Positions 609 through 54,857 of a stretch of DNA of 64,000 nucleotides are shown here, one piece after another. Location: assembly GCA_002269645.1 (NCBI GenBank), contig NIVC01002379.1:115441-179440 (forward strand), in the 5' to 3' direction. The DNA comes from Macrostomum lignano. Lineage: Eukaryota. The first letter of the stretch is position 1; every line of letters starts with the position of its first letter. The notes beneath the pieces are model-generated. The model was not told the origin of the DNA. It was given only the letters and a program-made list of their open reading frames with translations, and made no database searches. The position numbers and the translations under genes are program-made.

Positions 609-2094
609 TCAGCAGTAGGGATAGCCAGTCAGTGCCGCTTTGTCCCCGGTGTACGCAAGTCGACTCTGTCGTTGCAGCTCATTAATACCGGCGTCTCCAA
701 GCCGCCGACAGTCCATGGGACCGATGCTGAACGCTGGTGACCAGCGGTTAGCCAGAAACGTGAAGTCGTTCCCGGAGGCGGCGGCGGCATCGCCTCGTTC
801 AAGCGCCCGACAGCGTCTCCGGATGAACTTGCTGAGACTGCGGAACACGCGAAGCTCTGTACGAAATGAGGGACCTTCTTGGGCCACGCGTCTCCAGAAG
901 CTGGCGTTGGCTGCCTGGTAGAGTTTGTAGTCAACGGGACTCCAGGCCTGGTGAACTCGCATTAAGTCGGGACGTTGGGCAGCCATCATGCGGGGATAGC
1001 GACCAATATTTCGCGACACAAATAAAATGTCCTTGAAACTCCAGTTCATCAGGCGTTTCAAAAGCACAAGCGAATGCATGAAATAATCTGTGATGAGGAT
1101 CAGATCGAAATCGGCTATGATGCTGGCAACAAATTTATCAGCATCTTGGCCTTCAACGTAACCAAGGATGCGTGACATTGTATTCTTAGTCAGGCTATAG
1201 TTGTCCGGCACGCAGTAGCGCTTTGCAGCCCGGCGTGGTGATTGGTACTCTCTGTCGTAGCGCGGCAGGTCGCTCAGGTACGTCTCAAAAGCATCTGGCC
1301 GCCCACCTAGCCCTGTTAGGTGTTAGGAATATTTATTTGTATGGCTGGAAGATTATTTGTTAATCAAATAAATATATCAAACCTGATATCTCCGCCATAT
1401 TGTAATAGGCAAACAGGGATTGAAGCTGCCGGAATGGCTCCCTCAGGCTAGTGATGTACACACAGGGCTTGGCCATGAGGCCATCGAGGAAGGTGCGGTT
1501 GTACACGCACTGGTCCAGCAGTACGCTAGGATGGGAGACACCCGAAGGCAGAACGATGTACTCCTGACGCAGAGGGTTCGGCCAGCCCAAATAGATTTTT
1601 TTGGGCAGCGGCATTGCGAAGCTGAGATGCCGAGACAGCCCGAATCTGCGCAGCATCGAAGTAATCGTTTCGCTAGCCGACTTAATCACCTTCAAGTAGA
1701 CGAAGCTCTGCCGTTCTACACCTCGCCGGCGTTTGTTTTTTGAGCCTTCAACGTCGCCGGCAGCATCGTCTTCCTCGGAGTCCGGCAGCAGCAGCGGGGG
1801 CGGGGGCGGCCGTGGCTGTAGCTGCGCTCTGAGTGCCGCACCGAGGAACCGCCACATGCGGCTACCAACACTGTTACCGCCGCCGTTGTTGTGGTCGACA
1901 GCGTCGTGAACTTCACCATAACCGTGCGCTGAATCGTCTGGCTGGTTGCCAAACCAAGTGGCTGCGGTGGCTAGCAGCCATAGGCCGGCCAGCAGAAGGA
2001 GGCTGCGGATGGCGAGCCGTTTTACGGCGGCCGGATGAACGCAGCAGCGCATGTTGAGACGGCCTGAACGCAGGACGTCTGTGGATGGATACAT
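609..2094 (-). CDS. Galactose-3-O-sulfotransferase family (GAL3ST-like) type II Golgi membrane protein, 2 exons, 471 aa
   Basis: Exons 2094-1383 and 1312-609, with a 70-bp GT..AG intron (GTTTGA...CTAACAG) joining in frame: MAEIS|GLGGRPDAFETY...YCVPDNYS. N-terminal TM, 5'-PSB-like FVYLKVIKSASET, 3'-PB-like YITSLREPF, and C-terminal FDLILITDYF..SLVLLKRLMNW / DYKLYQAAN..FW typical of the family. Confidence 0.88.
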
Positions 2095-6716: not shown

Positions 6717-9179
6717 TGGAAAAGTAATTTCTAAAGCTTCATTTTTAGCTAATTGATTTTGCGCTTCAACAGTAATCAAGAATCGATGGCTGGAACAACC
6801 GGCAATTAAAAAGGACAATTTTCTGATGTCGAAAAATTACGACCCCTCTAGCATTATAAGAAAGTGTTTCAAGTATTGATACGCAAGCTCACGAATCGGC
6901 ACGATAAAAAGGTACTTGTTTTCATGGTTTCTTTTCCATCTGCAAAGACTGCTTGATGGATAACCCATAGGCCGTTAACTCATCTGCTTCGATTGTCGTC
7001 TCAATAGCCAGATGAAAGTGTCCGCTTCAGAGACCTAATCGGCATGCCTTCTGATTCATGAAACCAGCTTTCAGTGAAAGCCTTAGCTTCTTCAGCTATC
7101 CAAAAGTTTTTATTCTATTCTATTCATTTCTTTGTGCCGTCGCTTCCCTCCTTAAAATGTTCATTTCCGAGGTTTCACCGTTGTAGTGTCGTGTAGCAAA
7201 GCAATCCACGCAGTTTTATTGCATTGTAAGCCGTGCTGTAGGCCCTAATTGTTCGCATTTTCCTATCACGCTATCCCAACAACGGGTACACGCATGGCTC
7301 AGAAAAACGAGCCACTCGACAATCTGTTGCAAACGAAGCAAAGTATTAATTCCAATTTCTTCAATGTAGCAACTACACAGCGTAGACTCCGGATAGACTC
7401 GTAGAAACTCGCAGATTGTAGAAGTTCAGCTTGTATGCGAGTAAATAATGGTTAAGCAATGTAGGTATAAATTGACTATGGTCGAAAAGTAGAAGCCTAG
7501 CCCGAAGATTTTGGGACCGTTTTGTCTTCAGATTAACATAAATACAAGTATTGACTCTCCATGACAGCTCCGCACTCTGATCAGGCAGATTTTCTAACTC
7601 TTCAAAAATAACACCGAGAACTTTCTAAGCTACTTGTAGTAGGGCATCCTGGTTTTAATGGGCAATAAAGCCATATGATCTTTGGTAATAACTATATTGG
7701 ATTTCTGCAACAAATGATTTGTAAGTATGCATCTTCAGTATGGATATAGTTAAAATTACTGGATTTTTGCTTGCAGATATCAAATTAAAGCTAAGTTAAC
7801 TAAAGAATACTGCATAAAAAGTCTAGAAAACATAAATTATAAAAGTAAATTACTTCTCAAAGCAAAAAACATGGAGCACAATAAACAACACTATTCTGAT
7901 CTGGGTGTTTCAAAACACGATCACGTGACAATTGTACACATGTGTGCGCAATGCTCAACATCTTTGAATTTAGTATATTAGTTCGTCGAAGAAGGTAAGT
8001 TTTAAAAAAACGATTGGCTTTTTGCTAATAGAGACGAAGCAGATATGTACTTTTTATGAAAAACGAATGGAAGCACCCGAACAAAGCGTAAAATGATAAT
8101 CTGACTCGCTGAATCGACTATATCAGATGGTCGATCTTAACCTGCATTTTTGCAATGATTTTAACTAAAAAGTGGCGCTAGTTTTCAAGGCTGGGAGTGA
8201 CGAGGATGCGCAGCCAAAGAACTGGTTGAATCCGGAATATCCGGAATAAAAGGATCTTTTTTTCTAGACTTTTACTGCATGAAAGAATCGATTTCACTGT
8301 CCACTTAACTTGGGAAAATTGTGCTGAAATGAGGAAGCACGCGGGTATTCATGTCAGTCTGGGGCTGATGTTGGATTTATTACAAGGTTAAACATTAAAC
8401 AGTTTCTTAATTTCAGTGGAATCTCCCTTACGTGTCTCCAGTCAAACGTGTATTCAGCTCGAAAATAACGCACACTGGACCTCACCGGTAGCTATTCTAT
8501 TTAAATTCTATTGCTTCATTTCGAAATTTGATACCGCACGAGCAGCAGAAGTGAAAATGTGGGGGCGGGATAGAATTTGTGTTCGAAAAGAAAGCTATTT
8601 TCGTCTCGTCTGCTTTATATTGTGTCGCTCATGCTTCAGGTAATGTTCAACATGACACAAATAACGTGTTACGAATAATTTTCTTGTCGAAAAGGGATGC
8701 ACAAATTTATAACCATGTATCAATCGGTGAATCTGGGAAAACAGTTTCAGGTTAACCTCAGGTTATGACTTAAGTGCCGCCCTAAAGCTACATGTAAGGC
8801 TACCGGTAAATCTGGGATAAGTATGATGCCCACAGGGATTCTACCGGAACTGCAATTTGTGAGCCCAGACAAAGTAGGTAAAAAAGGAATCAATTGTTTA
8901 GAAGTCTTACTTAGAATAAAGTCTGCTGCATCATACGCTGGGGCCTTTTGTGCTATTCTTGGCGTGTTCCTTCCAGGCGGGCGTCCTGACAAAAAGCAAA
9001 CTTCTACACGTGCTGCGGAGTGGATTGGAGCTTCCCTGAAAAAAATCAGTTTTGTTATTTTTGTGCCGATGCATGTTATTCAGCTGCAGTTGGCAGACCA
9101 GATCAAGTACGAGTGTATGAAGTTTGTTGTAAAAAACAGACTCTCAATAGATTTATAAACATTTTCCATTCAGTCTTCG

Positions 9180-9619: not shown

Positions 9620-11014
9620 GGGTGACATACATCGAAATCGCAACTGTCTATCTGGTAGGTGATGCTCCCATATTTTTGTGTCACACCAAATTATCAAGTA
9701 CGCGCCTGATGACTAACTAAGGACTATGGTAGATAGCTAGACAATCAGATTTTCACGATCTTCTATTCCAGCTGGCGTTGATGATGCGTAGCCACTGAAT
9801 CCCTGTCTACATTGGATATCAGCAGGCTACGGGTCCCTGATGCAGGCGCTATGCATAGATTTTTCTCTGCCAGTCTCGGCATGAAATCAGATCTCTGGCC
9901 GTCTTCACGCTTCTGTGATTAGCACACCAGGTCGACTCGTCCTCCAGCTCTCTCACCCTCGTTCCCTCCGTGCCGCTGCAACTATGGAGCTCAAACTATT
10001 CTGATATTAACCATGCAAAGATCAATCAAAATGCTGGCATAGGCTAGTCAATGCAGGCCCAGTAAACAGCAACTTTTTTATCTTTTTCTGGATGTCGTAG
10101 CTTCATGCTTTGGCTTTGATTTGACCACAATGTGATCTAATTATTTCTTCAGGAGCTCAATCAAGGCCTCTTCTCTAGGATCTATAGGACGAAAACAGGC
10201 TGAAATCAAAGATACCTTAGATAGCCGTATTGATACGAAATTTCGATTTCACGATTCCTGATTCTATGCAGCTGATATATTTTAAAGCAAACTTTCCACG
10301 CATCGCATCCCGAAAATGCTCAAAAAACGATTTTTTTCGTGGTTCTTTGGAAACAGCGAGCATCGTATGCCATGAAAGGTTCGACATATCTTATAGTGTA
10401 GAGGGTGCTTTCTAACGGATTGAAGCTGCATAAGTATTGAAATAATTTCAAAAGCGAACTCTGATACTTATGGTAGTGAAGCTCCTGTCAGGAATTCGGG
10501 TCATTCATCACTTGCATGATATGAATAGGCTTGAGAAGGGTCGATCAGCTTTTGAGCTACTGTTATGATCTGATCGAATATGCATGCAATGCTATCTTTA
10601 TTCGAAGAACAGTAATTAAGGAGGGTTGCGTTGGAGGCATGCTTCGACCTAGGAAGTGTATGCATAAAAAGTTGCAGAATCACTGCTCAGTACTAATCTT
10701 GAAGCTATGAATTAATGTTGAGCCGAATCAAATTAGGGAGTCAAGCAATGGCCAATCCCAGTTCAGGTAGAACCTGGTGAGAGACGAATGGAGAGAAAGA
10801 TTATTGGCTGAAAGCGAGAAAGGGAGCCGTCAGATGACAGGGAAGCCTATGTGTGGCAGCGTCTGTGGAAAATAAAAACTCAATTCTGTGCTCAACTGAG
10901 CCTTGGTTACATCCCACGCAAACAGGCTGGAACTTCCGTCCAGAGGCTATACTTTCGAATTCATTGTTTCCGTATTTCATCCGGTAAATTTGCTTGCTGC
11001 TTAAGGCTGCCCTG

Positions 11015-13423
11015 ATGAACTGCCAAACTGGACAAACAGTCTGCGGCTTGCTGCTGCTGACGCTCTGCCTGCCGGTGACTCTGAGCGGAGGTAAGCATCT
11101 CCCGGACCACTAGGCTGTAGCTGTATACTTGAGCGTGTACATAGTGACAGCAGCGCGAGCGTGCCAGCGTTGGGCAGTGGTGCAAGAGTGAACGAACGAT
11201 GCCTGGGCGCTTAGACGGAGATGGCACAGGAGTCTCATCCGGAATGCTTCCGTTCTGTACTGTTGCTATTAATGATAACAGAAACTGTCACTTTCTCAGT
11301 ATCAACCTTACTTTGTAAGTGTATATTAAAACTGTCACCAACTGTCAGTCATCGTTCGAGCGTAAGTATTTTTTACACGAAATCTTGGAAAATCTGCCAA
11401 GGTTAAGTTGCTAGCTTTACTTAAGAATTACGTCATTCAGTGCAGTATAACGGCTTGGTCGATGGGTAAATGATGTTTTATGAGAGCACCGTCAGTACAA
11501 GCGTACAACTTTTTTAGCTTCAGCAATCCTCCCTCCCCAAAGTGACTGCTTTTTCGGGAGTGCCGATATGAGGCTTCGCAACTAACCATTGTTCCGTCTT
11601 CATCGTTCCGTTACTACGATGATTGACTGCCGTCGGCTTCAGAAGCAGATATTCTTGATTTTTTATATGTACATTTTGAATTTCTGTCCCAAATCAACAC
11701 CCACGCTATTCCCGCTTCCTGTTGCATTCCTAATAGTTTCAGATTTTTACCTGGGGAAAATTTCCTATTATAAGCGGGGCTTCTAGATAAATTTGACTTT
11801 TTTATATGATGAAGGGCCATACTAATTGATGCTGGGTGACCAGAATAGTGAGACTCCTTATAACAAGCCAAATTAATTTAGAGAAGAGAACTCGAAAAAT
11901 GTAATTGAATTCATCATTGAGCCTGCGTCATCGAATGACCTCAGTTGCTGTTCACCCGGGACACACCCTTCACAGGGAAGTATCATTATTCCCCGGTCAC
12001 CATTAGAGAGATTAAAAGTTGGCTTGGCTTTGAAGTCCGTGCAAGCTCAGTGAAATAGAGCACGGATTACAGAGAGGAGCGGCAGGACATGCTCGCAATA
12101 ACAGGGTACCCTTCCATGCATATTTTGCCTCTCTTGCCTCTGCATAAGTTAAGATGAAGGTAACGATGGCTGACTCTGATTTGAATAGCAAGATGTCTTC
12201 TGACCTACCGGCATTTAATCAGAATATCTGATGAAGAAAGCAGATTATTTGAATTAATAAATTTCGTTCCAACTTGCAGAGTGTACGCTCGTACGCTCGC
12301 ATAGCGCTGATCCGAGCGGATCTTAGGATTAAAATGGCTGCAGATTGGGATCAATAAACCCGGGATTAACCCCCCCCCAAATTGAATTTTATGCCCGAAC
12401 TAAGGAGGAAAAACCGAATCTGATCCAGTCTGATGCGGAATCTGTCAGCTCAGTAATGAAAATAATATATAAATTAGCTCACAATCTTGCTTTCTCTGGC
12501 TGGGAAGACTTACAAAAACAAGTTTTTTTTCAATACTGCTCTGCCAGGTACATTAGACACCGGAGTTATCTTCAGAGACGAATTCTTCTCGTCTCTGAGT
12601 GCATGCAATCCAATGTGCGGAGTTGCACTAAACTCAGAGAGTCTACAATTAAACAAAAACTGATACATGGTTCGGGACTGTTGCCGGACATGTTGCAACA
12701 AGTGCTCGAACGTGAAGATTTGAGGATGTCAAGTAGATTTATCAGATCTATCGGCACTAATAGTTTCCCAAAATTTTGAAACTCACCTCTTTAGCCTTAC
12801 AGCAATTCAACGTAGGTAGCTTGGCCGATGTTCTAACGTCGCTGGTGAAATGGGTACTTTTGTACAATACATCGATTTTTGGCCGACGTTTGGCCCTTGG
12901 TGCTGGCGCCCCTTGGTGCTGGCGCCCCTTGGTGCTGGCGCCCCTTGGTGCTGGCGCCCCTTGGTGCTGGCGCCCCTTGGTGCTGGCGCCCCTTGGTGCT
13001 GGCGCCCCTTGGTGCTGGCGCCCCTTGGTGCTGGCGCCCCTTGGTGCTGGCGCCCCTTGGTGCTGGCGCCCCTTGGTGCTGGCGCCCCTTGGTGCTGGCG
13101 CCCCTTGGTGCTGGCGCCCCTTGGTGCTGGCGCCCCTTGGTGCACAGGGTTGGTTAATTTGTGAATTTTATCGGGTGATTAATTTGAAATTTTCAGAAGC
13201 TTTGGACCCAGAGGAGCCAGTAGGCAGCATTGAACTCGAAGAGCCGTCATTAACCAATTATGACGCCCTTGATGCCGCCGCCAATGCTGGTGGTGATCGG
13301 GCAGGCGCGGCAGGACCTGTGACGCGGCTTCTGGAGGCGCTGCGAGCTGAACAAAACGTCGGGAGTTTCGAACGGCCAGCCAAGCGTTGCAGGATTAACG
13401 GAGCGGCCTGCATGCTGGGCTGA
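11015..13423 (+). CDS. Allatostatin-C/somatostatin-like neuropeptide precursor, 2 exons, 100 aa
   Basis: Exon 1 11015-11090 encodes signal peptide MNCQTGQTVCGLLLLTLCLPVTLSG, with donor GTAAGC in phase 1. Acceptor TTTTCAG at 13196; exon 2 13197-13423 joins in frame: acidic pro-region, KR, then C-terminal CRINGAACML-G-stop (C-x2-N-x3-C plus amidation Gly). Confidence 0.75.
12894..13143. repeat. 16-bp minisatellite (GGTGCTGGCGCCCCTT) x about 15, intronic
   Basis: Near-perfect tandem units; they explain the LVLAPLGAGAPWCWRP ORFs. Confidence 0.97.
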
Positions 13424-17954: not shown

Positions 17955-20901
17955 CTACTCCATCTCAGTCACCTGAATGATCTCCTCGTACTTCGGCGGC
18001 TCCTCGTCGGCAGCGAAGCCCGAGTTGAAGGCTCCCACGGCCACCTCGTCGTAGCTAGGTGGCATGTCCGGCCTGCGGCGCGTCCTGTCCGAGAAAAGAT
18101 CTGGGGGCAGTCGGCCGTCCGACACCGTCATGGCAGACAGCGCTGAGCGATGATGGCTCACGGCTCGGGCGCGAGACCTCGAAGACCACCTCTGGCGCAG
18201 ACAGGTCGAAAGCGCTACGAAAGCCGTCGCAAAGACGAAGAGCCCGATGAGTACACGAACGATGAAAGACCAGTATTTACTCTGTCCGCTGGACCCACCT
18301 TCCGTGCAGTTTGCTTCATCGCTTGAGTCGCTGCAGTCTGTTTGACCGTCGCACACTTTGGCCAATAGGATGCACTCTCGGCCGTTTGAACAGCGCCACT
18401 CTAGAGTTGTGTTGAGTTCGTTAAAACTTGTTTAGCTCGTACTGAAGTCATGGCAAAAATTGAACTAAATCTAGCGAGGAAGCAAACTTTCATGACGCTG
18501 ACTCCTCAGAGCGCACATGTACATGGATACGTGAGCAGGCGCACTCTCACGCAGTGTGTACAGCGGCCCTGACTTTCTAATCATCAGACACTCTTTGTGC
18601 CTTGGGCGTTAGCCCTCATGGGCGAAAATCGCAAAAATCTTTGCGATACATTAATGTGACTGCATCCGGAATCGAACCTGGGTACGTCGTTGGCGCGAGA
18701 GCCAGACGCATTGTCTTGCAATTTGACGATCATTATTCACATTTTTAATGCAGAACAATCCATTACTACAAGCAATGCATTGTCTGTAGGATCATCAAAC
18801 AGAAAAACAATGCAAAGAATCAGCGGTCGCAGCACGTGACAACCATTTGTCTATGGCTCGCGCCTACCGGCGCTCGCCAGACAATCGTTGTCACGCACTG
18901 GGACCGCTGATTATTTATCCATTGCCACTAGGCTACTTTAAACCCCTCTCTTCATTTCTCCCGCTTGTCTTTTGATTTCGTATATGCGAATACGAGCTAA
19001 AAATTCATGCTTTTTATCGAAAGATTTTCATAAAACGTACCGCTACTTCCACACTGAACAGTGCCGTTGACGCCATTGGAACAGTCGCCGTCAGTCACAC
19101 TTAGGTCATCCAAAAGCACCGTGTGAACTTTGTCCCATCGATAAGCTCTGACCACGAGAACCACGCTAGTAAATGAAGATATCGCTTCCGAGCTAACTGA
19201 TCCACTGATCCGATTCCACTGATTGATAGGTCCAGTTGTGGTCAGCACCACCATCGAGTGTCCTGGATAGGTTCCGGATATTTGAACCTCCATTTGGAAG
19301 CTGAACCCGTTGGAGCCCACTCCGTAGAACCACAGTTCGAAGCACCTTTGGCTGCTATACCCAAGACGGCGATTGGACAACAAAACGGCATCCTCGCTTC
19401 CAGGACACAATCGCAGCATCCACTGAGGCAATCGCGGCACACTCCGATCCGGCACTGAGCTTGAAGTGTGGTCCAAGAACGAGCTGATTCCGAATTCACT
19501 GGCTACGCTAAAGTCGGTGACAACTGGCAAGTTAACCGTCTCCCAGCCGCAGGTTGACCACTCAAACGAGCAGATGAACGGCATTCGGCTCTCATAAGCG
19601 GAATTACTGCACTCTGTGGGTTCAGCGCTCAAGTCGTCAAGCCAGTGCGCGCCCCCAGTTGATTTATTCCTGCCCTCATCTGACTGGATGATGTTTACAT
19701 CGATCCAACCGCCAGAGAATCCAGACTCAAGCTGCACTTCAGCCATGCTCCAAGTGGTCAGGCTCCAAAGAGCTGGCAGCCGCAGCAGTACTCGACCACC
19801 ATTCGATTCGGTAAGCGTCAGGGCCTCGTTAGCTGTAGTAAAGCCATTTGATATCCAATAGAATCGGTAGCAGGTTGCAGATTCTGCTTCGGCTGCAGCT
19901 TTGAATCCAGACAATCTCAAAGGCGATCGCGTCCGTTGAGCGAACTCAACAGAATTTCGCTGCACTCTCAGACTGCAGTCGCGTAGGTCAAGCTTCTGGC
20001 TGAAGTGGTTCGAGTGATCCACTTTGCAATCCACCCAGGCATCTTCTCTTTGAATGCTGTGTGCGCCGGTTCGACCAAGAGCAAAATTTGTGCCGAAGTT
20101 GCCAGGTGAATAGCAGCGAGCGTATTCGTAACTTTCGTCGCTTGACATTCCGGCAAAGAAGTCGCTGGAATACGGCCGACTGCAGTCGTTAATGGAGTCG
20201 CAGCGCTTGCTGAAATTAAACCGCGTGCGATTTAAAGTGAGAGCTTTTTAAAAATATTTTTACAGCACACAGTTATTGTTTTAGTGATTTTGTTCTGCAT
20301 GAACTCACCTCGAATTGATTTCGGATCCGTCCAGGCACCGATGTCTCCCGATAAGGCTAGAACTGTTTTGCCCCGGCTTCAAGTTTCTGGAGTCCTCGGT
20401 AGCAAACTCCGCTAGGAACAGAGTCACTCTTTCAAGCTTGGGCTGCAAAACTTCAACGTTGTGTACAGTTAAGAAATACCTGTTGATCGTGTCTGAGATG
20501 TGAAGGCAGATAGATCCGCTGTAGAGACTTTCAGGGCGCAGAAAAACAAACGTGTCGGAGTCGTCTCGCTGCCACAATAGAGAGCCGTTACCCGCGTAGT
20601 TAAGAAACGAGTCGTGCTCACTTTTAAATCCAAATAAAAAGTAAGTATCGTTAGCAGAGTAGAATTCGAACTGTTTGAACTCGATGCACAAGACGTCAGA
20701 TTCGTTTCTAAACTCAATTTCGAATTCGTAGACGCAGTGCGATTGCACAGGTAAGGAGTGGGGAAAGTTTTCACTGACGAATATCCCGCTGCTTTTAGTG
20801 GTAGAGTTTGCATCAATATTGAACACTTCTCTGCAGGCGAGGCAGCAACTCTGAAACAGCGTCAGCATCAATAGCTGATAAATCCTCAATTTAAAAATCA
20901 T
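17955..20901 (-). CDS. Type I receptor A: signal-CUB-LDLa-MAM-MAM-LDLa-TM-PPxY tail, 3 exons, 735 aa
   Basis: Exons 20901-20309, 20209-19041, 18400-17955; GT-AG introns of phase 2 and 1 join in frame. CUB-like GIFVSENFPHSLP..CVYEF; MAM CSFEWSTCGW...LLDDLSV..GDC; LDLa WRCSNGRECI..VCDGQTDCSDSSDEANC; TM; PPSY and PPKY. Confidence 0.88.
18490..18725 (-). mobile_element. Second tRNA-derived SINE-like element, in intron 2 of receptor A
   Basis: Minus-strand B-box CCCAGGTTCGATTCCGG preceded by a tRNA-like head; the tail GCGCTCTGAGGAG...GAAAG resembles L2-type SINE tails. Confidence 0.45.
18818..18912. repeat. Hairpin MITE-like inverted repeat (arms about 34 bp)
   Basis: AATCAGCGGTCGCAGCACGTGACAACCATTTGTCT ... 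AGACAATCGTTGTCACGCACTGGGACCGCTGATT. Confidence 0.7.
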
Positions 20902-21469
20902 GTCTGTCCGTTCCTTCTTTTGATCTTTTCGCGAGAATAGCTATATGAACTTTTTACTGTCTCATAAACACTCTCTAAGCACCTACTGCTATGCTTAAAA
21001 GCATGAGCACAAACGTCACAAAAGGTAGGAAAGCTTGAGCAAAAGACGTTAATTGGCGATAAGATATGTTTGATAAGTACATGTACCTTCACCGCACAGT
21101 GGGCAGCACCGTAGCACTGTCGACACCCGTGTTGATATCAAAATTTTAATCGTCAAATTTATATTTGTTTCTATGATGATATGCTTAAAGACGATTCGAA
21201 AAAGCAAGCATTGCATGGTGCCGTTCTGCACCTGGCTGCGGGACCTTAAGACACATTCTACCATTTTGCTTGAGACGCGCAAAATCTTTCGCGTTGTCAA
21301 AAGACAAAAATGTTGACTTATACGCCATGCATGTAGTGCACTCGTACAAGATGCCTTCTTAGATTTTAACACTGCAAGAGTTCTTGTTTATAGTTCTTAT
21401 TTTCATTTTTGTAAAGCTTGGGGAGTATTAGGATAGGATTGAGCTGGAATCTTTGTGTGTTTTACCAAA

Positions 21470-21527
21470 CTGGATTTTACCATTCAGAACTGGATTTTAC
21501 CATTCAGAACTGGATTTTACCATTCAG
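21470..21527. repeat. 20-bp tandem repeat x3 (ACTGGATTTTACCATTCAGA)
   Basis: Read directly. Confidence 0.9.
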
Positions 21528-21825
21528 CTTTCCGATTGTAATTTTTCTTCATTTTTTATGAAGCTACAAGGCTATTAAATTGAGTAGCAGAGTTGGTGAG
21601 TAAAAAAGGACTGATCGACCGATCATGGATCAGTTATAGTCCAAACATGACCAGTCACTCAATAGACATGGACTGAAAAACCACTCATTGGCCTGTGTTA
21701 AATCAGTCATTGAAGTTGATAGACAAACCATAGACCTGTGTCAAATCAGTAATAGATCTGCAATAAACCAGTAATTAAGCTGTAATAAACCGTTATAGTC
21801 ACTGACCGGCCAGATCAATTTAAGA

Positions 21826-22153
21826 TTAGCCATAGACAAATAATAGCTCATCGTAGACCAGTCCGCACAGAAAGAGAGACACGATGCTGAATTTCGCTAT
21901 TAAGTCGGCTCTCTTAGGCGATATGTTGGCGGCGTCAATATTCTCCGATTCTTCCCCGTTCAGCAGCTGATTTTTCACTGCCTCTGCTTCGTCTCCTACT
22001 GCATCGTCTGGGACTTCGGCGTCGTCTGGCTGTGGTGGAGCAGCTTGTTTTTTCTTGCTCAATAAGCTCTTGTTTGTTTCCTGAAGCCGGTAGGCCATTG
22101 TCTCTGAGAGCCGCGCGCAGTTGGGCTACTGTTAACCGGTCGAGATCAGACAT
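21826..22153 (-). pseudogene. SAP-domain ORF relic with frameshift (retroelement gag-like or SARNP-like)
   Basis: MSDLDRLTVAQLRAALRDNGLPASGNKQELIE is a SAP motif; an acidic continuation lies in another frame. About 30-bp direct repeats at ~21851 and ~22433. Confidence 0.55.
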
Positions 22154-23386
22154 GACGACAGATGAAAAATTTTAGAGCTAAAAAATTGAGCTCACGCAGG
22201 CAGCCAAAAACGCTGAGTAAGCAGAGCGAGACGCAAAGAAAAGGGCAGACGGCGCAGAGGCTAAAGCCCACCTCGCCCGGCCACCACCCCACGCACGCAG
22301 AGCCAAGCACCCCCCATACAGCGCGGACAGAGGGAGAGAGAGAACGCACGCAATGCGACACAAGGCAGGGCAAAGGAGAGGGGTTTAAAACTGGATAGTG
22401 ACTAGTCAAGACCGGTCACAAACCAACGCAGCATCGTAGACCAGAAAGAGAGACACATTGGGAAGACGCGAACACCCATTCCGCCAAATTTTGAAAGCGT
22501 CGGCATAGAAAATGGGCCGGCGACGCACTGGTATATCTTTCGCCAGCGCATTAATTAATTATTGCCAGTGAGTCTTGAATGGGTAAAAGTAGTGAGTAAG
22601 CGCAGGACTAATGCTGACGAGAAGTCCAGCTGTTTCGTTAACCGAGTTGCCAGATTTAGAATACGGCCTTGCAGGTACGGATGTCTGAAGAGGCAGCACG
22701 GCTTTGGAAGATTCAAACAGTCGGAGTGACTTTTCGATACAGTCCGACGGCATTTCGATACAGTCGGAATGAAGGCATCTCGTATCTCTCCGCGTTTCGG
22801 AACTGGCAAGACGTCTTGGAGTACAGCACTGCTAAATTGACTACAGGTAGTGCCGCTTGCCCAAATTGAGCGATTTTGGGTCTTGCTTCAAGTTTTAATA
22901 GGAGTACACAAGCCAGAAAAGTCAGGTTATTACCGAGACAAGTGATTCAAGCCCGACGGAGGATCCAGGGAGCGCCAGGTTTAACCATATCAAGTCCGCT
23001 AGCTCGTCTGAAGTTTCGAAAAATCTTCGATCACTCTCTAAATTTAATTGTCTTTACGAAGATATTTTTGATAAATGACTTTAAAAATCGAAGAGAAATA
23101 AAATTACAATACAATTTCACCTGCAAAAAACTGCTTCGGTCCTCGTCGAGCATCTCAAAAAAGCTCTAGATTGATTTTTTAAACCTATAGCACTTACTCC
23201 GATGTTCGGACCGGAGTACGTGCGACAGAATACGAGGCGTTAAAATTTGACAAGACGTGAATGATTAAAGAATTGAAATAAAAAACTATACAGATTCTGC
23301 TACGAATATATGGAATCAAGAGTAAGCAAGAAAAAGTTATACACGAATTCGTGAAAGGTTTTACGCGTTTTTATCGTTAGGTTCGC

Positions 23387-26017
23387 TTAAACAGTGGAGC
23401 CGCTGCTCTCTTCCTGGTTTTCATTGCCACTTCTCGCCCTGGGTGGTCGCCGAGGTGGCAGCTGAGGCGGCTGGGATTCTTGCTGCTGCTGCTGCTGCTG
23501 CTCCTGCTGCTCTCGCATCTGTATCACCTGAATGATCTCTTCGTACTTCGGTGGCTCCTCGTCGGCAGCAAAGCCCGAGTTGGAGGCTCCTGCGGCCACC
23601 TCTTCGTAGCTAGGCGGCATGTCCGGCCTGCGGCGCGTCCTGTCAGAGCAAAGGCCGGGCGGCAGCCGACCGTCCGACACAGTTACCGGTGGCGCCCGGC
23701 TGTGGTCAGCGAGGCCTCGAGGCCCGCGGCCCCACCAGAGGCGCCTCTTCCGAAAGCAGATGGACAGAGTCAGGAAAGCCACGACGCTAACTGAGATGCC
23801 GAGAACAATGCGAAGGATAAGGGACCAGGCATAATCTCCAGATCTTTCGTAGCAGTTAAGCTCGTCACTGGCATCCGGGCAATGTATTCGACCATCGCAA
23901 CGATATCTCTCCAGAATACACTGCTGCCGATTGGAACATCTCCATTCTGAAGTAGTTTATTCAAAAGACTTAGTCTAATTAGTATGGCACTTCTGCTAGT
24001 ACCGATATACTCGTAATACGAGTATTTTAGAGAACAAGGGAATAATTTTTCTATCTAGTATCCGTATTTCATATATCTTTCAATCTCTAGAAATACTGGA
24101 AATACTCGTAGCTAAACAACAAATTTACCACGCACCATTGGATCCACATTGCACTGATCCGTTGTTTTCGACATTACAGCTGCCCTCAAATACGCTCAAG
24201 TCATCCAGTAGCACCGTAGATAATTCGTATCGATCCTCAGCTAGCATAGTGACACTTATGATTGGTGATTTTGGGAGCATCGTCATAAAAGTGCCACTCA
24301 GACGGTTCCATTGGTTCATTGGCATAGTTGTCGTTAGCAAGACAAATTCATTAGGAAGAATCCCGGATATCCGAGCCTCAACCGTGACGCTGTAGCCGCT
24401 GTATCCGACACCATTGAACCAGATTTCAAAGCACCAAACACGGTCGAATGCCAAGCGACGCTTGGACTCCAGTTGTCCTTTGAAATTGGTTCCCGGACGC
24501 AGACGGAGAACCCGTTGCGGCAGTGGTGGCATCGTCCGGTCTGGCACCGATATCGAGGTGTGGTCCGATATGCTGACTCTCAACTCTTTTGCAACGCTAA
24601 CGTCGGTGACGACTGGCAAGTTGGTGGCCTCCCAGCCGCAGGTTGACCACTCAAAAGAGCAAACGAACGGCATCCGGCTCTCATATGCAGACTTGTCGCA
24701 GGCAGCCGGCTCAGCACTCAAGTCGTCAAACCAGTGCGCTGCCGTAGTCTGATTGCGTTGTTTCGACAGAAAGGCATGAACATAGATCCATTTATTCGTG
24801 AATCCGGGTTCTAGCTGGATTTCAGCCAAGCTCCAAGAGTAAAAACTTTTGCGAGCTGGCAGTCGGAGCAGGACTCGGCCACCATTCGGCTCCGACAGAG
24901 TCAGGGCCTCGTTGTCATCGGTGAAGCCACTAGAGAACCAAAACAACCGGTAGCAGGATGCGGACCGCGTGTTGGCAGCCCATCTAATTCCGTACAGCCA
25001 ATAGTAAAGCGGAAGTGAATTGGTGTTGCCCATCCGAATTTTGAGACTGCAATCGCGGGTGTCAGAGAATGGGAATTGGCGCGAGTGGTCGGTACGACAG
25101 TCACGTTCGGTTCCCCAAGTCGAGAGGCTATGTGCGCTAGCCTGACCTAGGGCAAAGTTGGTGCCAAAACTGCGGTTTGAATTGCAGCGCGCGTGCTCGT
25201 AACTTTCATCGCTTGATTGACCAGCGAAGAAGTCGCTTTGGTACAACTGGCCGTTGTTTCTGCCACAGTCAATTACTGAATTACAGCGGGCGCTGGAAAG
25301 CACATTCATGGAGGATTTTTTCTTGTATTTATGGAGGATAAACAGTATTTCCCCATGTATAATGAACTTTGGTTAATAAAGTGCCTTTTGGTCCTTTTTT
25401 GAAGCTCACCTTTCGTTTAAATAGCTGCCATCCAAGCACCGGTGAAGACCCAAGAAACTTGAATTGTTGTCTATCACTGTCCCCGAGTCCATAGCCTCGT
25501 ACTCAGCGTAGAAGCGAGTCATTCTACCAATACTGTTCTCATAAAATTTCCGATTGACCACAGCCACCAGATGAGTGGACATTTGGTAGTTGCAATGCAT
25601 GCAGAGCGGTCCGTTATGCAGATTTGATGGCCACTTGTGCACAAATTTACTAGCGTTGGCTCTCTCCCATAAGAGCGAGCCGTTCCCAGTGTAGATAAGG
25701 ACCGCGTCGTAATGACTCGAACCTCCGACCAGAATTTGCGTCTCCTTGTCCGAGTTCTCGTTCACAGTGAAGAGTTCCAACTCCTTGAATCGAAAGCACA
25801 GGACATCGGAGGCGAAGCTTAGTTGCACTTTGAATTCGTAGACACAATAGGACTCCGTTGGCAGCGAGTGTGGAAAATTTTCGCTGACGAAAACTCCTCG
25901 ACTGTTAGCGCTTGTTGGACGGCCGTCGACGGTAAGCACTTCTCTGCAAGCGAGACAAAAATTCGCATGTTGAAGAAGCTGCAACACCGACAGCAGAAGC
26001 AGCAATTGTCCTGTCAT
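23387..26017 (-). CDS. Type I receptor B: same CUB-LDLa-MAM-MAM-LDLa-TM-PPxY architecture, 3 exons, 774 aa
   Basis: Exons 26017-25410, 25292-24136, 23946-23387; intron positions and phases are the same as in receptor A. Second LDLa WRCSNRQQCILERYRCDGRIHCPDASDELNC; poly-Q tail. Confidence 0.88.
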
Positions 26018-28483
26018 TTGAGAAGAGTTTTTTGCTTCTATATGTCTGAATCTACTCTTGGATAAAAATTCGAGGTGTATATAGGTAAATCAAAGTATTG
26101 GGTCGATGCACTGAGCGTAAGTGGCTGGCTTTGTTTGCTAGCTATACACTTATTTCTTTGCTTTTCAGTATTTCCACCAGCGAATAAACTCTAGCATAAA
26201 CAGTTTTTTCAATGCGATAAGATATTGTGCACTTGCTGGGCCAGTAGAGGGGAGTTAGATACCGAACCTGCTCACTGCCTTTCAGCTCGCAGCAGTCTGA
26301 GTTGCCATGGCGATAGGCTTGTGCAGTGCAGGACTCGAGATTACTCGAGGTTGAGAATTGGAAGCCTGCGAGATATCGCTTTTCGCAGGCCTTATTAACT
26401 ATAGCAAATTGCCTGACACATCCGCAACCTGAGTAGTTCTCTAGAGGATGTTGGCGGTAAAATATTTTGGATTAAACTATATGCATTTTGAAAGAACTAT
26501 GAGCATATCCTGAGTCTCAAATAACTCCAAAAAAAGCAATCAAGTGGCCAGAATGAAAGGCTAAAGGTGTCCCCAAGTAACGTCTAAGCCTGTCTTTTTC
26601 TCTTTATGGAACCCAATGATTAAAATTTTGCAGGGCCTTTATAGGCTTTATCTCTTAGCTTTGTTTTGGTTGAAAAAAACAAAATAGACCCGATTTAGTT
26701 GGATTCGCTGCAATACGGATGCTATAGAGATAAAATATAAAGTTTTAAGATGAAAGTGTAAGCATCATTACATGTAAATTATACTGCAAAGACTCGGTGA
26801 GTTTTATGCATCTGTTTATTCTTAGAACGCGTAGCGAACTCCGGTCGGAGGGGCTGTTACACCTCGAGTTGTTATAATTCTACACATTGGCTGGTGAATT
26901 TTATTATTCCATCTGATAAATTCTGTTTATCCAGAAATTTAAAGAAAGCTACGAGGTAGGTTTTAAACTTTGTTCTCTTGATGCCTCTGGATTAAGCTGA
27001 AAATATGTAAATATTTTTAATCTTTTTCTATTTCGTATGAGCGTAGCTCATGTCCTGGATGGTGTCACACATTATAGCGACCGTTACTAGCAGGTAGCAC
27101 GTACCTGCATCGGACTCACTCCTATAACCGGCTTTAGCAATTTCATCTGAACACAATTGAAGTAGCAATATACTTCATTTTTATTCGTAGCTCTAGTGCA
27201 ATCTACGCGTTTTGTTTAGTTCATAGGCACTGCAGGTTCACTTTACATAGAGCGCGCGCTCTGAGCAATTGCCGGGCATAACTGGTCTATTATACTCGGA
27301 TGCTTTACTAACAATAGTTGCGCACTCAGCTAAGAGTATCAGAGCCAACTGTACAGCCCCCATCGGGGTGCAGGCCGGCAATTGTAGTTAGACAAAGCGC
27401 GCTGTTATTGTAAGAGCCTGCCATATGGCTTCATAGGGGCTAATTGGCATCGTACGCACTGGCGTGGCGCACTTATGATTTTCTAATTGGGCGAGAATTA
27501 GCATAATTATAAACGGATAGAACGGTAGACGAAGCCTCTATCTTTTTATCCGTATTGCATTGGTTGCTTCTGCATAGTGGTGGGGGGTAGACTGGACCAC
27601 AATCTCCTAGCTATTGAATACACAGTTTGTAATTGTACATATAATGACATGAGTAGTCATACACCAGCCTGCAGCCCTGCTGTGCACACTTGTCTGCTAC
27701 GGTCCCCTAAAAGCGCCGCTCCAGAGAGTGCACCCGATCGGATGCTATATATATAAGATAAGCGTAGAAGCTCTTCGGCAAAAGAAAAAAAGAAAAAAAT
27801 GGAAAATTCTCTATGCTCGTAAAGCGCAACGATTTTGTCAGTACGAGCCGTAATAGTAAGTAAATTTTTCTGAACCCTAGATACTTCGGCCTACCGATTG
27901 CGCATGCAATGAGTGGCCGACATTAGCCATCTAACCGAATACAGTTCCGGTTTTATAATGCACATGATGCATAAGAGCTGCTTGTAGTTTAATGTCGCCA
28001 CTCATTGCATGCCTATGCGAGCCTGAAGCAACTTCATTTCAGCCTACCATTGTCCCTATTTCGCATGAGGCAACCTTTTTTTCTGTCTTTGGAATCATGC
28101 GATGTATAACAACGTGAAAAAAATGCATGCAAGTTTTTAAATAGGTCAGAAACAGCATTCAAGGCTAGCTAGTAAGCTCGTCAGACGCTAGGTAATGCGT
28201 CTGACTCGCACATTAATTTGGGGCTCGGGCAGGGGATTTTGCAATTCTCGCCCAAGAGCCCTTTAAGTCTCAGAGGTTTGTTCGTGCCTGACGATAAGAA
28301 AATTAGAGGGCCTCCGTACTCTGCGTGCCTGCCGTGTACAGAGTGCCTAGAGTGTGTGTCGGAGTACATGCGTGTCAGCTGTGGTCAGCGGAGTGTACAC
28401 GACTGCTTGCTCCCTCCCTCGCTGCCTGCTGGGTCAACTGTCGTTCTTTATCTACTGGAAAAATAACTAACTACATGTAGCCA

Positions 28484-28809
28484 CAGGGGCGTCGCCACCG
28501 GGAAGGGGGACAGGGGGGAGGCATGCCCCACCCAGTGAAAGCTAAAGCCCCACCCCACCTTGTGACCCGTTGGGGAAATCCGTAGTTTTGCTTTAGGGCG
28601 CCAAAATATAACGCCTTTGGCGCCAAAATGAGTGCCTGTGGCGCCAAAATGAGTGCCTTTGGCGCCAAAATGAGTGCCTTTGGCGCCAAAATGAGTGCCT
28701 TTGGCGCCAAAATGAGTGCTGGCAACACCGATTCTCAAAAAATGTACATGTGGGAATTTAGTCATGTACTGAGTACATGTAAGACGTAGATTTCATGGGG
28801 ACGCCCCTG
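28484..28809 (+). mobile_element. hAT-type MITE (TIR CAGGGGCGTC) containing a 21-bp internal repeat x5
   Basis: TIRs CAGGGGCGTC/GACGCCCCTG; 8-bp flanks TGTAGCCA/CGTAGCCG (6/8 match). Internal unit TGGCGCCAAAATGAGTGCCTT. Confidence 0.8.
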
Positions 28810-29455
28810 CGTAGCCGCCAACTGAGTCAGACTAGCCAAGAGCTTGAGTTAGAATATAGCCAAGCGCTCAGGTACTCGAACTCTGTTTCAAACTCATGTC
28901 ACACTAATATGTTATATGTTATTTATTTCTTAGGACTAGTTGTGATTACTTATCGTAGATTGCCTATACTTACGAGTATAGTGGAACCCAATAAGTTGAT
29001 TTACAGTCTTATGATGCCGAGTTAAATATTCCCATTGATTACACTCTAGCAAGGACTATTCAAACATCCTTGAGGTTACTGAGTTAGTAACGCTTGGTCA
29101 TTCGCAAAGCAACAAAACACTGAGTAAGTAACAATAGGCTAACTATTAAGAAACGCACTTTTGATTCGTTGGATACATTCGTGCACCAGGTAAATAATTT
29201 TAGATAATCTCATTCATTACTGAAAAGTACTTCGTATGATGTTTAGTGTACAACGGCTACGTCCAAACAAATCAAGACGTGGGAAATTCTTCAAGTTTCT
29301 GTTAGTCGACATATCTAACTGTTATAGCCCGCCATCTAAATAGAATTTGAATTTCTCTTCTAGTTAGGCATCGCATTTCACAGTTGCGGAGTTGCAGATT
29401 TGACAGTTCGATAGCGGAGAAACCCGCGTCCAGTCAGTTGACGACTTCACAAAAG

Positions 29456-31923: not shown

Positions 31924-32385
31924 TTCGGGGGTACCCAGAATGGCTCTGTATTTCTGAGCTGCTGTCTACTTGGCCTGCAAATTCAATGAAGTTATGCAAC
32001 TCTGGCTGTGGGCTCAATGTCAAAGCATAACAGCTATTTTTTCTCTGGCGATTCCTATTAATGTACTTAGAAATTATTATCTCATAAATGCTAGAACCAG
32101 ATTTTTGTAAGCCAATAGCTAGAAATACGTTCATAGAGCTTTTCGACGAGAAAGATAAGTTATCGGAGGCACCAGATACTGCACTTGCTGTACATGCATG
32201 GCACTAATAACTGGCTGTGCAAGCTCTACGCAACAAACGAGGGAATGGCGATACTTCTCAAAACACGATCTATAAATTTCTAATGAAACTTGAATATAGT
32301 CGAGTCGGAGTATTCAAATGCTGCTATTGGTACATATAGGCATTTTAAAGAGATCAGATTTGTTTTAACGAGGAATACGTGAATC

Positions 32386-46670: not shown

Positions 46671-46845
46671 CTGTTCGCCGCATGCTACGAAGGCAGCCTC
46701 TACCGAGGCATGTGCATCAGGGCCGGGCGGGAAGACGCCCTTGTACATTTCATCGACTATGGCAATACATAACGGGTGTCGCTGATCATCAAATATTTGA
46801 ACTACCAGCTGGGCTGCTGCACACGAGTCCGCTGCTAGCTCGGTA
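46671..46845 (+). pseudogene. Decayed duplicate of the start of the large Tudor exon
   Basis: Acceptor CCCTAG, then LFAACYEGSLYRGMCIRAGREDALVHFIDYGNT-stop (GAA>TAA), then a frameshift; high nucleotide identity to 43667-43830. Confidence 0.85.
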
Positions 46846-53969: not shown

Positions 53970-54074
53970 ATTCTTTAAAAGATACGTAAGTTAATGTGTC
54001 TATTGCCAAGTTTTCATAGATGATTCCCATTTTTTATTTCATGTTCTTCACGAATTCTATTGTTAAAATTTAGA

Positions 54075-54782: not shown

Positions 54783-54857
54783 GCATTTTAACGATATTAC
54801 GAAAGTATGAGGGGCTTATGGATTCAATTCTGTCAGTTGTAACTCTTGTTTCTTCGA

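What the first reader, a model, noticed from the sequence alone, without database searches (positions are those of the whole stretch)
11015..13423. Hidden two-exon allatostatin-C/somatostatin-like neuropeptide gene
Seen: a 76-nt signal-peptide exon with a GTAAGC donor splices in phase over a 2.1-kb repeat-laden intron onto an exon encoding an acidic pro-region, KR and C-terminal CRINGAACML-G-stop. Known: AST-C precursors carry one C-terminal C-x6-C peptide with Asn third after the first Cys (CYFNPISCF; CLVNxxxC in lophotrochozoans), and terminal Gly signals amidation. Inference: the mature peptide is cyclic CRINGAACML-amide, a divergent AST-C-type ligand. Gly at loop position 4 also recalls CCHamide, but the precursor layout favours AST-C. 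The ORF track fuses exon 2 to a minisatellite and misses exon 1.
Basis: partly seen in the sequence, partly recalled or inferred. Interest (0 to 1): 0.85.

Follow-up and report, generated by a model that had tools for sequence, protein, structure and literature searches.

The report
Orphan cyclic-peptide prohormone gene, Macrostomum
This is a real, already annotated two-exon gene of the flatworm Macrostomum lignano; it encodes a 100-residue secreted precursor whose tail looks like a small disulfide-looped, amidated signalling peptide, but the proposed kinship with allatostatin-C/somatostatin has no statistical support and remains a guess.

Summary
Exon 1 (11015-11090, G|GTAAGC) and exon 2 (13197-13423, TTTTCAG|A) splice in frame to a 100-aa protein ending KR-CRINGAACML-G-stop. 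The gene is not hidden. The identical protein is GenBank PAA58399.1 (BOX15_Mlig009695g3, "hypothetical protein") in Macrostomum lignano Mlig_3_7, an annotation built from RNA-seq transcript models. Two near-identical genomic copies exist, and an older frameshifted UniProt model crosses the same junction.

The prohormone reading fits the sequence: hydrophobic signal peptide, acidic Ala-rich spacer, a dibasic site, a C-x6-C loop and a terminal Gly. It is still untested.

The allatostatin-C (AST-C) assignment is weak:
- Shared with AST-C: layout, six-residue loop, Asn at loop position 3.
- Missing: the aromatic residue after Cys2, which all 24 compared loops have, and the hydrophobic loop core.
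- The intron is phase 1, not the phase-0 pro-region intron of AST-C genes.
- Against an AST-C loop matrix it scores -3.4 bits; the worst true member scores +4.8.
- HMM and hhalign comparisons are non-significant.
- No homologue was found outside M. lignano, but a control shows the databases lack congeners, so conservation could not be tested.

Verdict: an ordinary annotated gene and a plausible orphan neuropeptide; AST-C orthology about 20%.

The parts
11015..11090 (+). Exon 1 (coding part), 76 nt: Met1 to the first base of codon 26. It encodes the signal peptide MNCQTGQTVCGLLLLTLCLPVTLSG.
   Evidence: It is the start of the annotated CDS. The hydrophobic core spans residues 10-21, with a Kyte-Doolittle mean up to 2.6.
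11091..13196 (+). Phase-1 intron, 2106 bp, GTAAGC...TTTTCAG, placed at the boundary between signal peptide and pro-region.
   Evidence: Both splice sites are identical in the two other genomic copies. The public CDS span 11015-13423 implies this intron.
12894..13143 (+). Perfect 16-bp minisatellite (CCCTTGGTGCTGGCGC, 15.6 copies) inside the intron. Its translation is what the mechanical ORF list fuses to exon 2.
   Evidence: The array is 156 bp and 224 bp shorter in the two paralogous loci.
13197..13381 (+). Exon 2, pro-region part (residues 26-87). It is acidic and Ala/Gly/Pro-rich (13 acidic and 4 basic residues, no Cys) and is presumed to be a spacer.
   Evidence: Both amino-acid differences among the three gene copies (G35D, S36R) fall here.
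13382..13387 (+). Lys88-Arg89, the predicted dibasic prohormone-convertase cleavage site.
   Evidence: Cleavage is inferred, not shown.
13388..13417 (+). Predicted mature peptide CRINGAACML (Cys90-Cys97 loop, C-x6-C).
   Evidence: It is identical in all three gene copies. The disulfide is inferred.
13418..13423 (+). Gly100 (presumed amide donor) followed by the TGA stop.
   Evidence: Amidation is inferred from the known mechanism of peptidylglycine alpha-amidating monooxygenase.

Best explanation
The locus is a small, genuine, transcribed two-exon gene of Macrostomum lignano (BOX15_Mlig009695g3). It encodes a 100-residue prepro-peptide of the prohormone type.

Proposed mechanism (every processing step is inferred from sequence, none shown):
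1. The N-terminal hydrophobic signal, encoded entirely by exon 1, directs the protein into the ER. It is removed around Ser24/Gly25.
2. The two remaining cysteines (Cys90, Cys97) form a disulfide.
3. A prohormone convertase cuts after Lys88-Arg89.
4. The terminal Gly100 is consumed by the amidating enzyme.

The product would be a cyclic decapeptide, CRINGAACML-NH2 (calculated [M+H]+ 1048.485). It would be released as an extracellular signal, most plausibly a neuropeptide or peptide hormone acting on a GPCR.

The peptide's family is open. It has the general design of allatostatin-C-type peptides, but on the tests run here it cannot be told from an orphan, lineage-specific cyclic peptide.
For: Gene and splice:
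- The spliced CDS equals PAA58399.1 / A0A1I8GEJ4 over all 100 residues.
- The called gene span equals 11015-13423.
- The GenBank annotation of NIVC01 derives from RNA-seq/StringTie/TACO transcripts plus TransDecoder ORFs (PMC5730564).
- An older, frameshifted model (A0A1I8FNY3) reads across the same exon junction.
- Three genomic copies keep both splice sites and the entire signal and mature-peptide codons.
- CDS G+C is 0.60 against 0.46 in the intron.

Secretion:
- There is a 12-residue hydrophobic core followed by TLSG.
- UniProt names two of the three copies 'Secreted protein'.
- A phase-1 intron at the signal-peptide boundary is typical of secreted-protein genes (established knowledge).

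Prohormone design:
- The spacer is acidic and free of Cys (net charge -9). It carries a single KR directly before a C-x6-C segment, then two residues and Gly-stop.
- Published spiralian AST-C, CCAP and other precursors show the same grammar: KR, then the peptide, then an optional Gly.
- Amidated AST-C2 has been confirmed by mass spectrometry in a nemertean.
- No Pfam domain and no folded-domain homologue were found.
Against:
- The gene ID is absent from the main text of the searched papers. It is also absent from the held supplementary tables of three M. lignano expression papers.
- No homologue was found outside M. lignano, so conservation of the peptide is unknown.
- The signal n-region has no basic residue.
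- Cys directly after KR is unusual for AST-C-like peptides.
- Signal, acidic propeptide, KR and a small Cys peptide is also the design of secreted toxins and of antimicrobial or gland peptides. Tissue of expression, not sequence, decides between hormone and exocrine product.
Confidence: 0.6

Rival explanations
1. The peptide is a true, divergent allatostatin-C-type ligand. It would be orthologous to spiralian AST-C and act on a gamma-rhodopsin AST-C/somatostatin-type receptor.
For: - It is a single peptide at the extreme C-terminus after a basic site, as in all 36 AST-C precursors collected.
- The loop has exactly six residues. This is 'always' the case in protostome AST-C (PMC9048919).
- Asn sits at loop position 3, Ile at position 2 (Novocrania has CLINIMSC) and Ala at position 6. 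Arg at position 1 also occurs in chitons (CRVHAIAC).
- C-terminal amidation occurs in several AST-Cs.
- hhalign puts the loop in register with the AST-C consensus. Arg85 aligns with the usual cleavage Arg, four residues before Cys1.
- The loop scores better than about 98% of random loops.
Against: - The PSSM score is negative (-3.4 bits). The worst leave-one-out true member scores +4.8 and the median member 19.
- Met follows Cys2, where all 24 compared AST-C loops have Tyr, Phe or Trp.
- Gly-Ala replaces the aliphatic pair at loop positions 4-5.
- HMMs of AST-C precursors match only the signal peptide. C-terminal HMMs give about -0.6 to -0.9 bits, and 7-11% of shuffles do as well; the pro-region adds nothing.
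- hhalign gives probability 0.6% and P = 0.09.
- The intron is phase 1 at the signal boundary. All AST-C/SSRP genes examined have a phase-0 pro-region intron.
- An AST-C profile search of 5.8 billion proteins returned molluscs, a brachiopod and arthropods but no flatworm among the best 120.
- Gamma-rhodopsin (SOG) receptors were counted as 0 in Schistosoma mansoni and Schmidtea mediterranea (PMC3261222).
- Allatostatin ligands were 'not yet reported in flatworms' as of 2018.
Confidence: 0.2
2. The product is secreted but is not a hormone. It would be a fast-evolving, species-restricted exocrine peptide or protein (gland, epidermal, reproductive or antimicrobial). The neuropeptide-like tail would then be either coincidental or processed for a non-signalling role.
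For: - No homologue was found beyond M. lignano in 1.84 billion representatives or in the 5.8-billion-protein word search.
- The pro-region is low-complexity.
- Published work reports rapid evolution of reproduction-related genes in Macrostomum (title of PMC7336406).
Against: - The gene ID is not in the held supplementary tables of the reproduction, germline or neoblast papers searched. This is weak, because the files may be incomplete.
- The combination of one KR, two Cys and Gly-stop at the very end of an otherwise Cys-free spacer is more specific than a generic secreted protein.
- The missing homologues carry little weight, because congeners are absent from the databases.
Confidence: 0.15
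3. The peptide belongs to another known Cys-loop family: CCHamide/excitatory peptide, CCAP, CCWamide or SSRP-like/urotensin.
For: - Gly at loop position 4 and a six-residue loop recall arthropod CCHamides. This rests on my memory of SCLEYGHSCWGAH-NH2, not on a retrieved sequence.
- The peptide is amidated, like CCAP.
Against: - Nemertean CCAP precursors carry several copies of PFCN..GC with a five-residue loop in mid-precursor.
- CCWamides are knottin-like peptides with eight Cys.
- SSRP-like peptides have a C-x4-C loop with a W-K core and a three-exon gene.
- CCHamide/EP peptides follow the signal peptide directly and end in GH-/GN-amide (established knowledge). Here the peptide is at the C-terminus and ends in ML-amide.
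Confidence: 0.03
4. The ORF is a non-functional by-product: a transcribed locus whose best ORF happens to look like a prohormone.
For: - The CDS is only 303 nt.
- The three copies are so similar everywhere (97-99% in the flanks too) that they give no evidence of purifying selection.
- The loose C-terminal pattern occurs once by chance elsewhere in the window.
Against: - A signal-peptide exon, consensus splice sites, a frame kept across a 2.1-kb intron, coding-like G+C and a complete prohormone grammar together are unlikely by chance.
- Two independent annotation efforts called the gene.
Confidence: 0.04

Closest known systems
Spiralian allatostatin-C precursors (e.g. Crassostrea ...RKR-SHIRCLVNVIACY-RKK, Novocrania ...KR-AYPCLINIMSCYTL, Rhyssoplax ...KKR-GHFACRVHAIACY-KKR; Thiel et al. 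2021 supplement)
   Same: - Short precursor of about 100 aa.
- One peptide at the extreme C-terminus after a basic site.
- Six-residue disulfide loop with Asn at position 3, Ile/Val at position 2 and Ala/Ser at position 6.
- Optional Gly-directed amidation.
   Different: - No aromatic residue after Cys2 (Met-Leu instead).
- Gly-Ala instead of aliphatic residues at loop positions 4-5.
- KR abuts Cys1, so there is no 3-8-residue N-terminal extension unless cleavage is at Arg85.
- The pro-region lacks the long coiled-coil-like segment, and profiles do not recognise it.
- Intron is phase 1 at the signal boundary rather than phase 0 in the pro-region.
- No statistical similarity.
Arthropod CCHamide / lophotrochozoan excitatory peptide (EP)
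   Same: Two Cys, amidated; arthropod CCHamides have a six-residue loop with Gly at position 4 (from memory).
   Different: CCHamide/EP sits directly after the signal peptide and ends in -GH/-GN-amide. Here the peptide is at the far C-terminus and ends in -ML-amide.
CCAP (nemertean KR-PFCNGYYGC-GNG-KR)
   Same: Small disulfide-looped, amidated peptide flanked by KR.
   Different: CCAP has a five-residue loop with an FCN motif, several copies per precursor and a mid-precursor position.
SSRP-like / urotensin-II-type peptides of protostomes (Koch et al. 2022)
   Same: C-terminal cyclic peptide from a small precursor. This is the other candidate branch of the somatostatin/AST-C question.
   Different: C-x4-C loop with a conserved W-K; three exons with phase-0 and phase-1 introns, the peptide being split across the last intron. 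None of these features is present here.

Membership tests
Allatostatin-C type neuropeptide precursor | Single bioactive peptide at the C-terminal end of a short precursor, preceded by a basic cleavage site | tested here: met
   KR at residues 88-89 and the peptide at 90-99 of 100. The layout is the same in 36 published AST-C precursors.
Allatostatin-C type neuropeptide precursor | Disulfide loop of exactly six residues (C-x6-C), invariant in protostome AST-C (PMC9048919) | tested here: met
   Cys90-x6-Cys97; the criterion comes.
Allatostatin-C type neuropeptide precursor | Asn (sometimes His) at loop position 3 | tested here: met
   The loop is C-R-I-N. Asn contributes +3.4 bits in the PSSM.
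Allatostatin-C type neuropeptide precursor | First loop residue aliphatic (molluscs, annelids) or aromatic (arthropods) | tested here: inconclusive
   Arg is neither. However, Arg occurs at this position in two chiton AST-Cs (CRVHAIAC).
Allatostatin-C type neuropeptide precursor | Aliphatic/hydrophobic residues at loop positions 4-5 (or Pro-Ile in arthropods) | tested here: not met
   Gly-Ala scores -3.8 and -2.7 bits. Gly is never seen at position 4, nor Ala at position 5, in the 24 compared loops.
Allatostatin-C type neuropeptide precursor | Aromatic residue (Tyr/Phe/Trp) immediately after the second Cys | tested here: not met
   Met98 scores -2.7 bits. All 24 compared loops have Y, F or W here.
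Allatostatin-C type neuropeptide precursor | N-terminal extension of about 3-8 residues between the cleavage site and Cys1 | tested here: inconclusive
   There is none if KR88-89 is cut. If cleavage is at Arg85 instead, the extension is four residues (PAKR), which is the spacing hhalign aligns. Mass spectrometry is needed.
Allatostatin-C type neuropeptide precursor | Phase-0 intron within the pro-region (common to all AST-C/SSRP genes examined by Koch et al. 2022) | tested here: not met
   The only intron lies after nt 76 of the CDS. It is phase 1 and sits at the boundary between signal peptide and pro-region (criterion).
Allatostatin-C type neuropeptide precursor | Detectable sequence/profile similarity to family members | tested here: not met
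   - hmmsearch matches the signal peptide only.
- C-terminal HMMs give -0.6 to -0.9 bits, and 7-11% of shuffles do as well.
- hhalign gives probability 0.6% and P = 0.09.
- The PSSM gives -3.4 bits against at least +4.8 for members.
- Positive control: the same profile retrieves 379 AST-Cs from the database.
Allatostatin-C type neuropeptide precursor | Peptide activates an AST-C/somatostatin-type (gamma-rhodopsin) GPCR, and such a receptor exists in the species | not testable with these tools
   The M. lignano proteome is not searchable here. The literature counts 0 SOG/gamma receptors in S. mansoni and S. mediterranea; M. lignano is unknown.
Prohormone / neuropeptide precursor (generic class) | N-terminal signal peptide, basic cleavage site(s), small product with an optional Gly amidation signal, and no folded domain | tested here: met
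   plus the UniProt name 'Secreted protein'. SignalP and NeuroPred were not available, so the assessment uses hydropathy and the -1/-3 rule only.
Prohormone / neuropeptide precursor (generic class) | Expression in neurons or endocrine cells and detection of the processed peptide | not testable with these tools
   No expression or peptidomic data could be reached. The gene ID is absent from the searched papers and supplements.
CCAP | C-x5-C loop with an F-C-N motif, usually several copies in mid-precursor | tested here: not met
   Here the loop has six residues, there is no FCN motif, and the single copy is C-terminal (against the CCAP sequences).
CCHamide / excitatory peptide | Peptide directly follows the signal peptide; C-terminal -GH or -GN amide | tested here: not met
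   The peptide lies 64 residues downstream of the signal peptide and ends in ML-Gly.

The most novel reading that the evidence does not exclude
CRINGAACML-NH2 would be the first allatostatin-C-type ligand recognised in Platyhelminthes. It would have been retained in the early-branching Macrostomorpha in a strongly derived form: the aromatic residue after Cys2 lost, the loop core reduced to Gly-Ala, and the intron shifted. That would imply that AST-C/somatostatin-type signalling was present in the flatworm ancestor and was lost or transformed later in triclads and parasitic neodermatans.
Probability: 0.18. Interest if true: 0.55.

Novelty: new member of a known kind. Interest (0 to 1): 0.3.

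Why it matters
Flatworm neuropeptide catalogues lack many ancestral bilaterian families. In the literature I could search, no allatostatin-C ligand has been reported for the phylum. The matching receptor class was also counted as absent from the two best-studied flatworms.

A cyclic amidated peptide from M. lignano would therefore be useful either way. The species is a transgenic, RNAi-tractable model on an early flatworm branch. The peptide could be a remnant of AST-C signalling or a lineage-specific ligand for one of the many orphan flatworm GPCRs.

As it stands, the gene is an already annotated 'hypothetical protein'. The added value is only a functional hypothesis that can be tested cheaply by peptidomics, in situ hybridisation and a receptor screen.

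Tried and rejected
1. Homologue searches with the precursor. The word-indexed search of 5.8 billion proteins and full phmmer over 1.84 billion representatives found only M. lignano copies and one low-complexity hit.
2. Pfam: nothing.
3. Literature searches for the peptide string and the gene ID: nothing. The supplements of three M. lignano expression papers also gave nothing.
4. The three genomic copies as a selection test. I rejected this because the flanks and intron are as similar as the exons.
5. An apparent pro-region resemblance (Mlig LLEALRAEQ against mollusc LKEALREA / FKMALREA). I rejected it because profile scores do not exceed those of pro-region shuffles.
6. An AST-C profile search for canonical flatworm AST-Cs. 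None appeared among the best 120 hits, and the remaining 259 were not visible.
7. A control with the neighbouring Fcf2 gene. It shows the protein database has no other Macrostomum species, so 'no orthologue found' says nothing about conservation.
8. A receptor search in M. lignano was not feasible with the collections on hand.
9. Rfam scan of the window: no RNA families.
10. McVeigh 2009 (PMC2749192) was not held. Koziol et al. 2016 was seen only as a reference, with no PMC id, and was not read.
Full report
**What is there**

The window is eukaryotic. Protein searches identify it as Macrostomum lignano, assembly Mlig_3_7 (GCA_002269645.1), contig NIVC01002379.1. Window coordinate x corresponds to contig coordinate x + 115440.

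At the coordinates given, an ATG at 11015 opens a 76-nt exon ending at 11090, followed by GTAAGC. A TTTTCAG acceptor ends at 13196, and the frame runs from 13197 to a TGA at 13421-13423. Joining the two pieces gives a 303-nt CDS and the following 100-residue protein:

MNCQTGQTVCGLLLLTLCLPVTLSGEALDPEEPVGSIELEEPSLTNYDALDAAANAGGDRAGAAGPVTRLLEALRAEQNVGSFERPAKRCRINGAACMLG

The mechanical ORF list does fuse exon 2 to the translation of an intronic minisatellite (ORF 12776-13423). It shows exon 1 only as a 39-aa ORF. The intron is 2106 bp and phase 1. It carries one perfect 16-bp x 15.6 minisatellite at 12894-13143 and no other repeat family.

**Is the gene real, and is it hidden?**

It is real and it is not hidden.

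- The spliced product is identical over its full length to GenBank PAA58399.1 (BOX15_Mlig009695g3, 'hypothetical protein') and UniProt A0A1I8GEJ4 ('Secreted protein').
- The gene call on the contig spans exactly 11015-13423 in window coordinates.
- That annotation was made from RNA-seq-derived transcript assemblies (StringTie/TACO plus a de novo transcriptome) with TransDecoder ORFs (PMC5730564). The 11090|13197 junction therefore rests on transcript evidence, although I did not see the reads myself.
- An older UniProt entry (A0A1I8FNY3, 58 aa, misnamed 'Oxidoreductase') is a frameshifted reading of the same spliced mRNA. It crosses the same exon junction.
- By sequence alone, 20 GT..AG pairs would keep the frame. 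The annotation, not the sequence, settles the splice.
- CDS G+C is 0.60 against 0.46 for the intron.

**Copies**

The assembly holds two further copies, g1 (PAA70734.1) and g2 (PAA63410.1).

- Exons differ at three sites: G35D and S36R in the spacer, and one synonymous change in codon 83.
- Both splice sites are identical, and the minisatellite is 156 bp and 224 bp shorter.
- Flanks and intron are as similar (about 97-99%) as the exons. These are recent duplicates of the partly duplicated DV1 genome, so they carry no information on selection.

**How it most likely works**

The protein has the grammar of a prohormone.

- A hydrophobic core spans residues 10-21 and is followed by T-L-S-G. The whole signal is encoded by exon 1.
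- A 62-residue spacer follows. It is acidic, Ala/Gly/Pro-rich and free of Cys, with net charge -9.
- There is one dibasic site (K88-R89), two cysteines spaced C-x6-C, then Met-Leu and a terminal Gly.

From the established mechanisms of prohormone convertases and the amidating enzyme, the expected product is disulfide-cyclised CRINGAACML-NH2 ([M+H]+ 1048.485).

All processing steps are inferred. One uncertainty concerns the cleavage site. In most spiralian AST-C precursors the cleavage site lies four to seven residues before Cys1. hhalign aligns Arg85 with that site, so a longer form, PAKRCRINGAACML-NH2, cannot be excluded. Cleavage with Cys at the P1' position has precedent (big endothelin, from my own knowledge).

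No Pfam family and no homologue with a folded domain was found.

**Testing the allatostatin-C reading**

I collected 28 spiralian and 8 arthropod AST-C precursors from the supplement of Thiel et al. 2021. I took the family's descriptors from Koch et al. 2022:

- the loop always has six residues in protostomes;
- an Asn is common in the loop;
- the first loop residue is aliphatic or aromatic;
- there is a phase-0 intron in the pro-region.

The M. lignano peptide shares several features:

- the C-terminal single-copy layout;
- the six-residue loop;
- Asn at position 3;
- Ile at position 2 (as in Novocrania CLINIMSC);
- Ala at position 6;
- Arg at position 1, which occurs only in chitons (CRVHAIAC).

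It lacks others:

- the aromatic residue after Cys2, which all 24 compared loops have;
- the aliphatic pair at positions 4-5, which is Gly-Ala here;
- the phase-0 intron (here the intron is phase 1 and sits at the signal-peptide boundary).

The quantitative tests point the same way.

| Test | Result for M. lignano | Comparison | Call |
|---|---|---|---|
| Position-specific matrix from AST-C loops | -3.4 bits | Better than about 98% of random loops. Worst leave-one-out member +4.8, median 19.
| Full-length AST-C HMMs | Match the signal peptide only | - | 45 |
| C-terminal AST-C HMMs | -0.6 to -0.9 bits | 7-11% of full shuffles score as well, and the pro-region adds nothing. | 49 |
| hhalign against the AST-C alignment | Loop aligned in register; probability 0.6%, P = 0.09 | - | 59 |
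| Positive control: the same AST-C alignment against 5.8 billion proteins | - | Retrieved 379 proteins. Named hits are molluscs, a brachiopod and many arthropods. No flatworm is among the 120 listed. | 58 |

The literature I could reach reports no AST-C ligand in flatworms. It counts zero gamma-rhodopsin (SOG) receptors in Schistosoma mansoni and Schmidtea mediterranea. The state in M. lignano is unknown and could not be tested here.

I conclude that the peptide is built like an AST-C, but membership is not supported. I put orthology at about 0.2.

**Other families**

- CCAP has a five-residue loop and an FCN motif, with several copies per precursor.
- CCWamide is a knottin with eight Cys (for both).
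- SSRP-like/urotensin peptides have a C-x4-C loop with W-K and three exons.
- CCHamide/EP peptides sit directly after the signal peptide and end in -GH/-GN-amide (established knowledge).

None of these fits.

**Conservation**

No relative was found outside M. lignano. However, a control with the neighbouring housekeeping gene Fcf2 returned only M. lignano entries and one nematode. The databases therefore contain no congeners and are insensitive at this distance.

**Verdict**

- Observation: confirmed.
- Gene model: already public.
- Prohormone mechanism: plausible (about 0.6) but unverified.
- AST-C/somatostatin kinship: a reasonable lead that fails most discriminating tests.
- Interest: modest. 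This is a cheap, testable candidate ligand in a tractable early-branching flatworm, not a discovery of a hidden gene.

Noticed in passing
UniProt A0A1I8FNY3 (P0002), corresponding to window 11015-13423: A 58-aa entry named 'Oxidoreductase' is a frameshifted mosaic of frames 1 and 3 of the same spliced mRNA. It probably comes from indel errors in the older assembly, so its name is wrong. It does, however, cross the same exon junction.
   Followed up: yes
window 12894-13143; L002 and L003 at the equivalent place: The intronic 16-bp minisatellite is perfect (100% matches). Its length differs between the three gene copies by 156 bp and 224 bp, so it is an unstable array that could mark the copies.
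   Followed up: partly
window 10990-11014: A pyrimidine-rich tract ending in AG (TTGCTTGCTGCTTAAG|GCTGCCCTG-ATG) lies 9 nt upstream of the start codon. It could be a 3' splice or spliced-leader acceptor. No transcript data were available to check.
   Followed up: no
window 8584-8643 (+): A chance match to the loose pattern basic-basic...C-x6-C...stop (RKESYFRLVCFILCRSCFR*). The C-terminal motif alone is therefore not rare in six-frame translation.
   Followed up: partly
window 50873-51955 (-): An intact 360-aa ORF of a mariner/Mos1-type transposase (Transposase_1, HTH_48, DDE_3 domains).
   Followed up: partly
window 17955-32134 (-): A tandem array of three paralogous genes. Their large exons encode a weak CUB-like N-terminal part, a MAM domain and a C-terminal transmembrane/Pro-rich tail. 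Public gene calls here carry LDL-receptor class A domains.
   Followed up: partly
window 42803-45154 (+): A Tudor-domain ORF (43649-45154) contains a 21-bp coding repeat (44225-44485, PSNEAK-like units). It is immediately preceded by a 30-bp x 25 minisatellite (42803-43543). A second Tudor-like fragment lies at 46523-46939.
   Followed up: partly
window 54060-55931 (+): An Fcf2 pre-rRNA-processing gene (54060-54782) is followed by a 33-bp x 29 minisatellite (54858-55810) that is open in several frames on both strands.
   Followed up: partly
window 609-2094 (-): Two ORFs of a galactose-3-O-sulfotransferase gene lie upstream of the peptide gene.
   Followed up: partly
window 58485-61772 (+): A 1095-aa open frame that is very rich in Gln, Pro and Ala (low complexity), in the G+C-rich right end of the window. 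It was not characterised.
   Followed up: no
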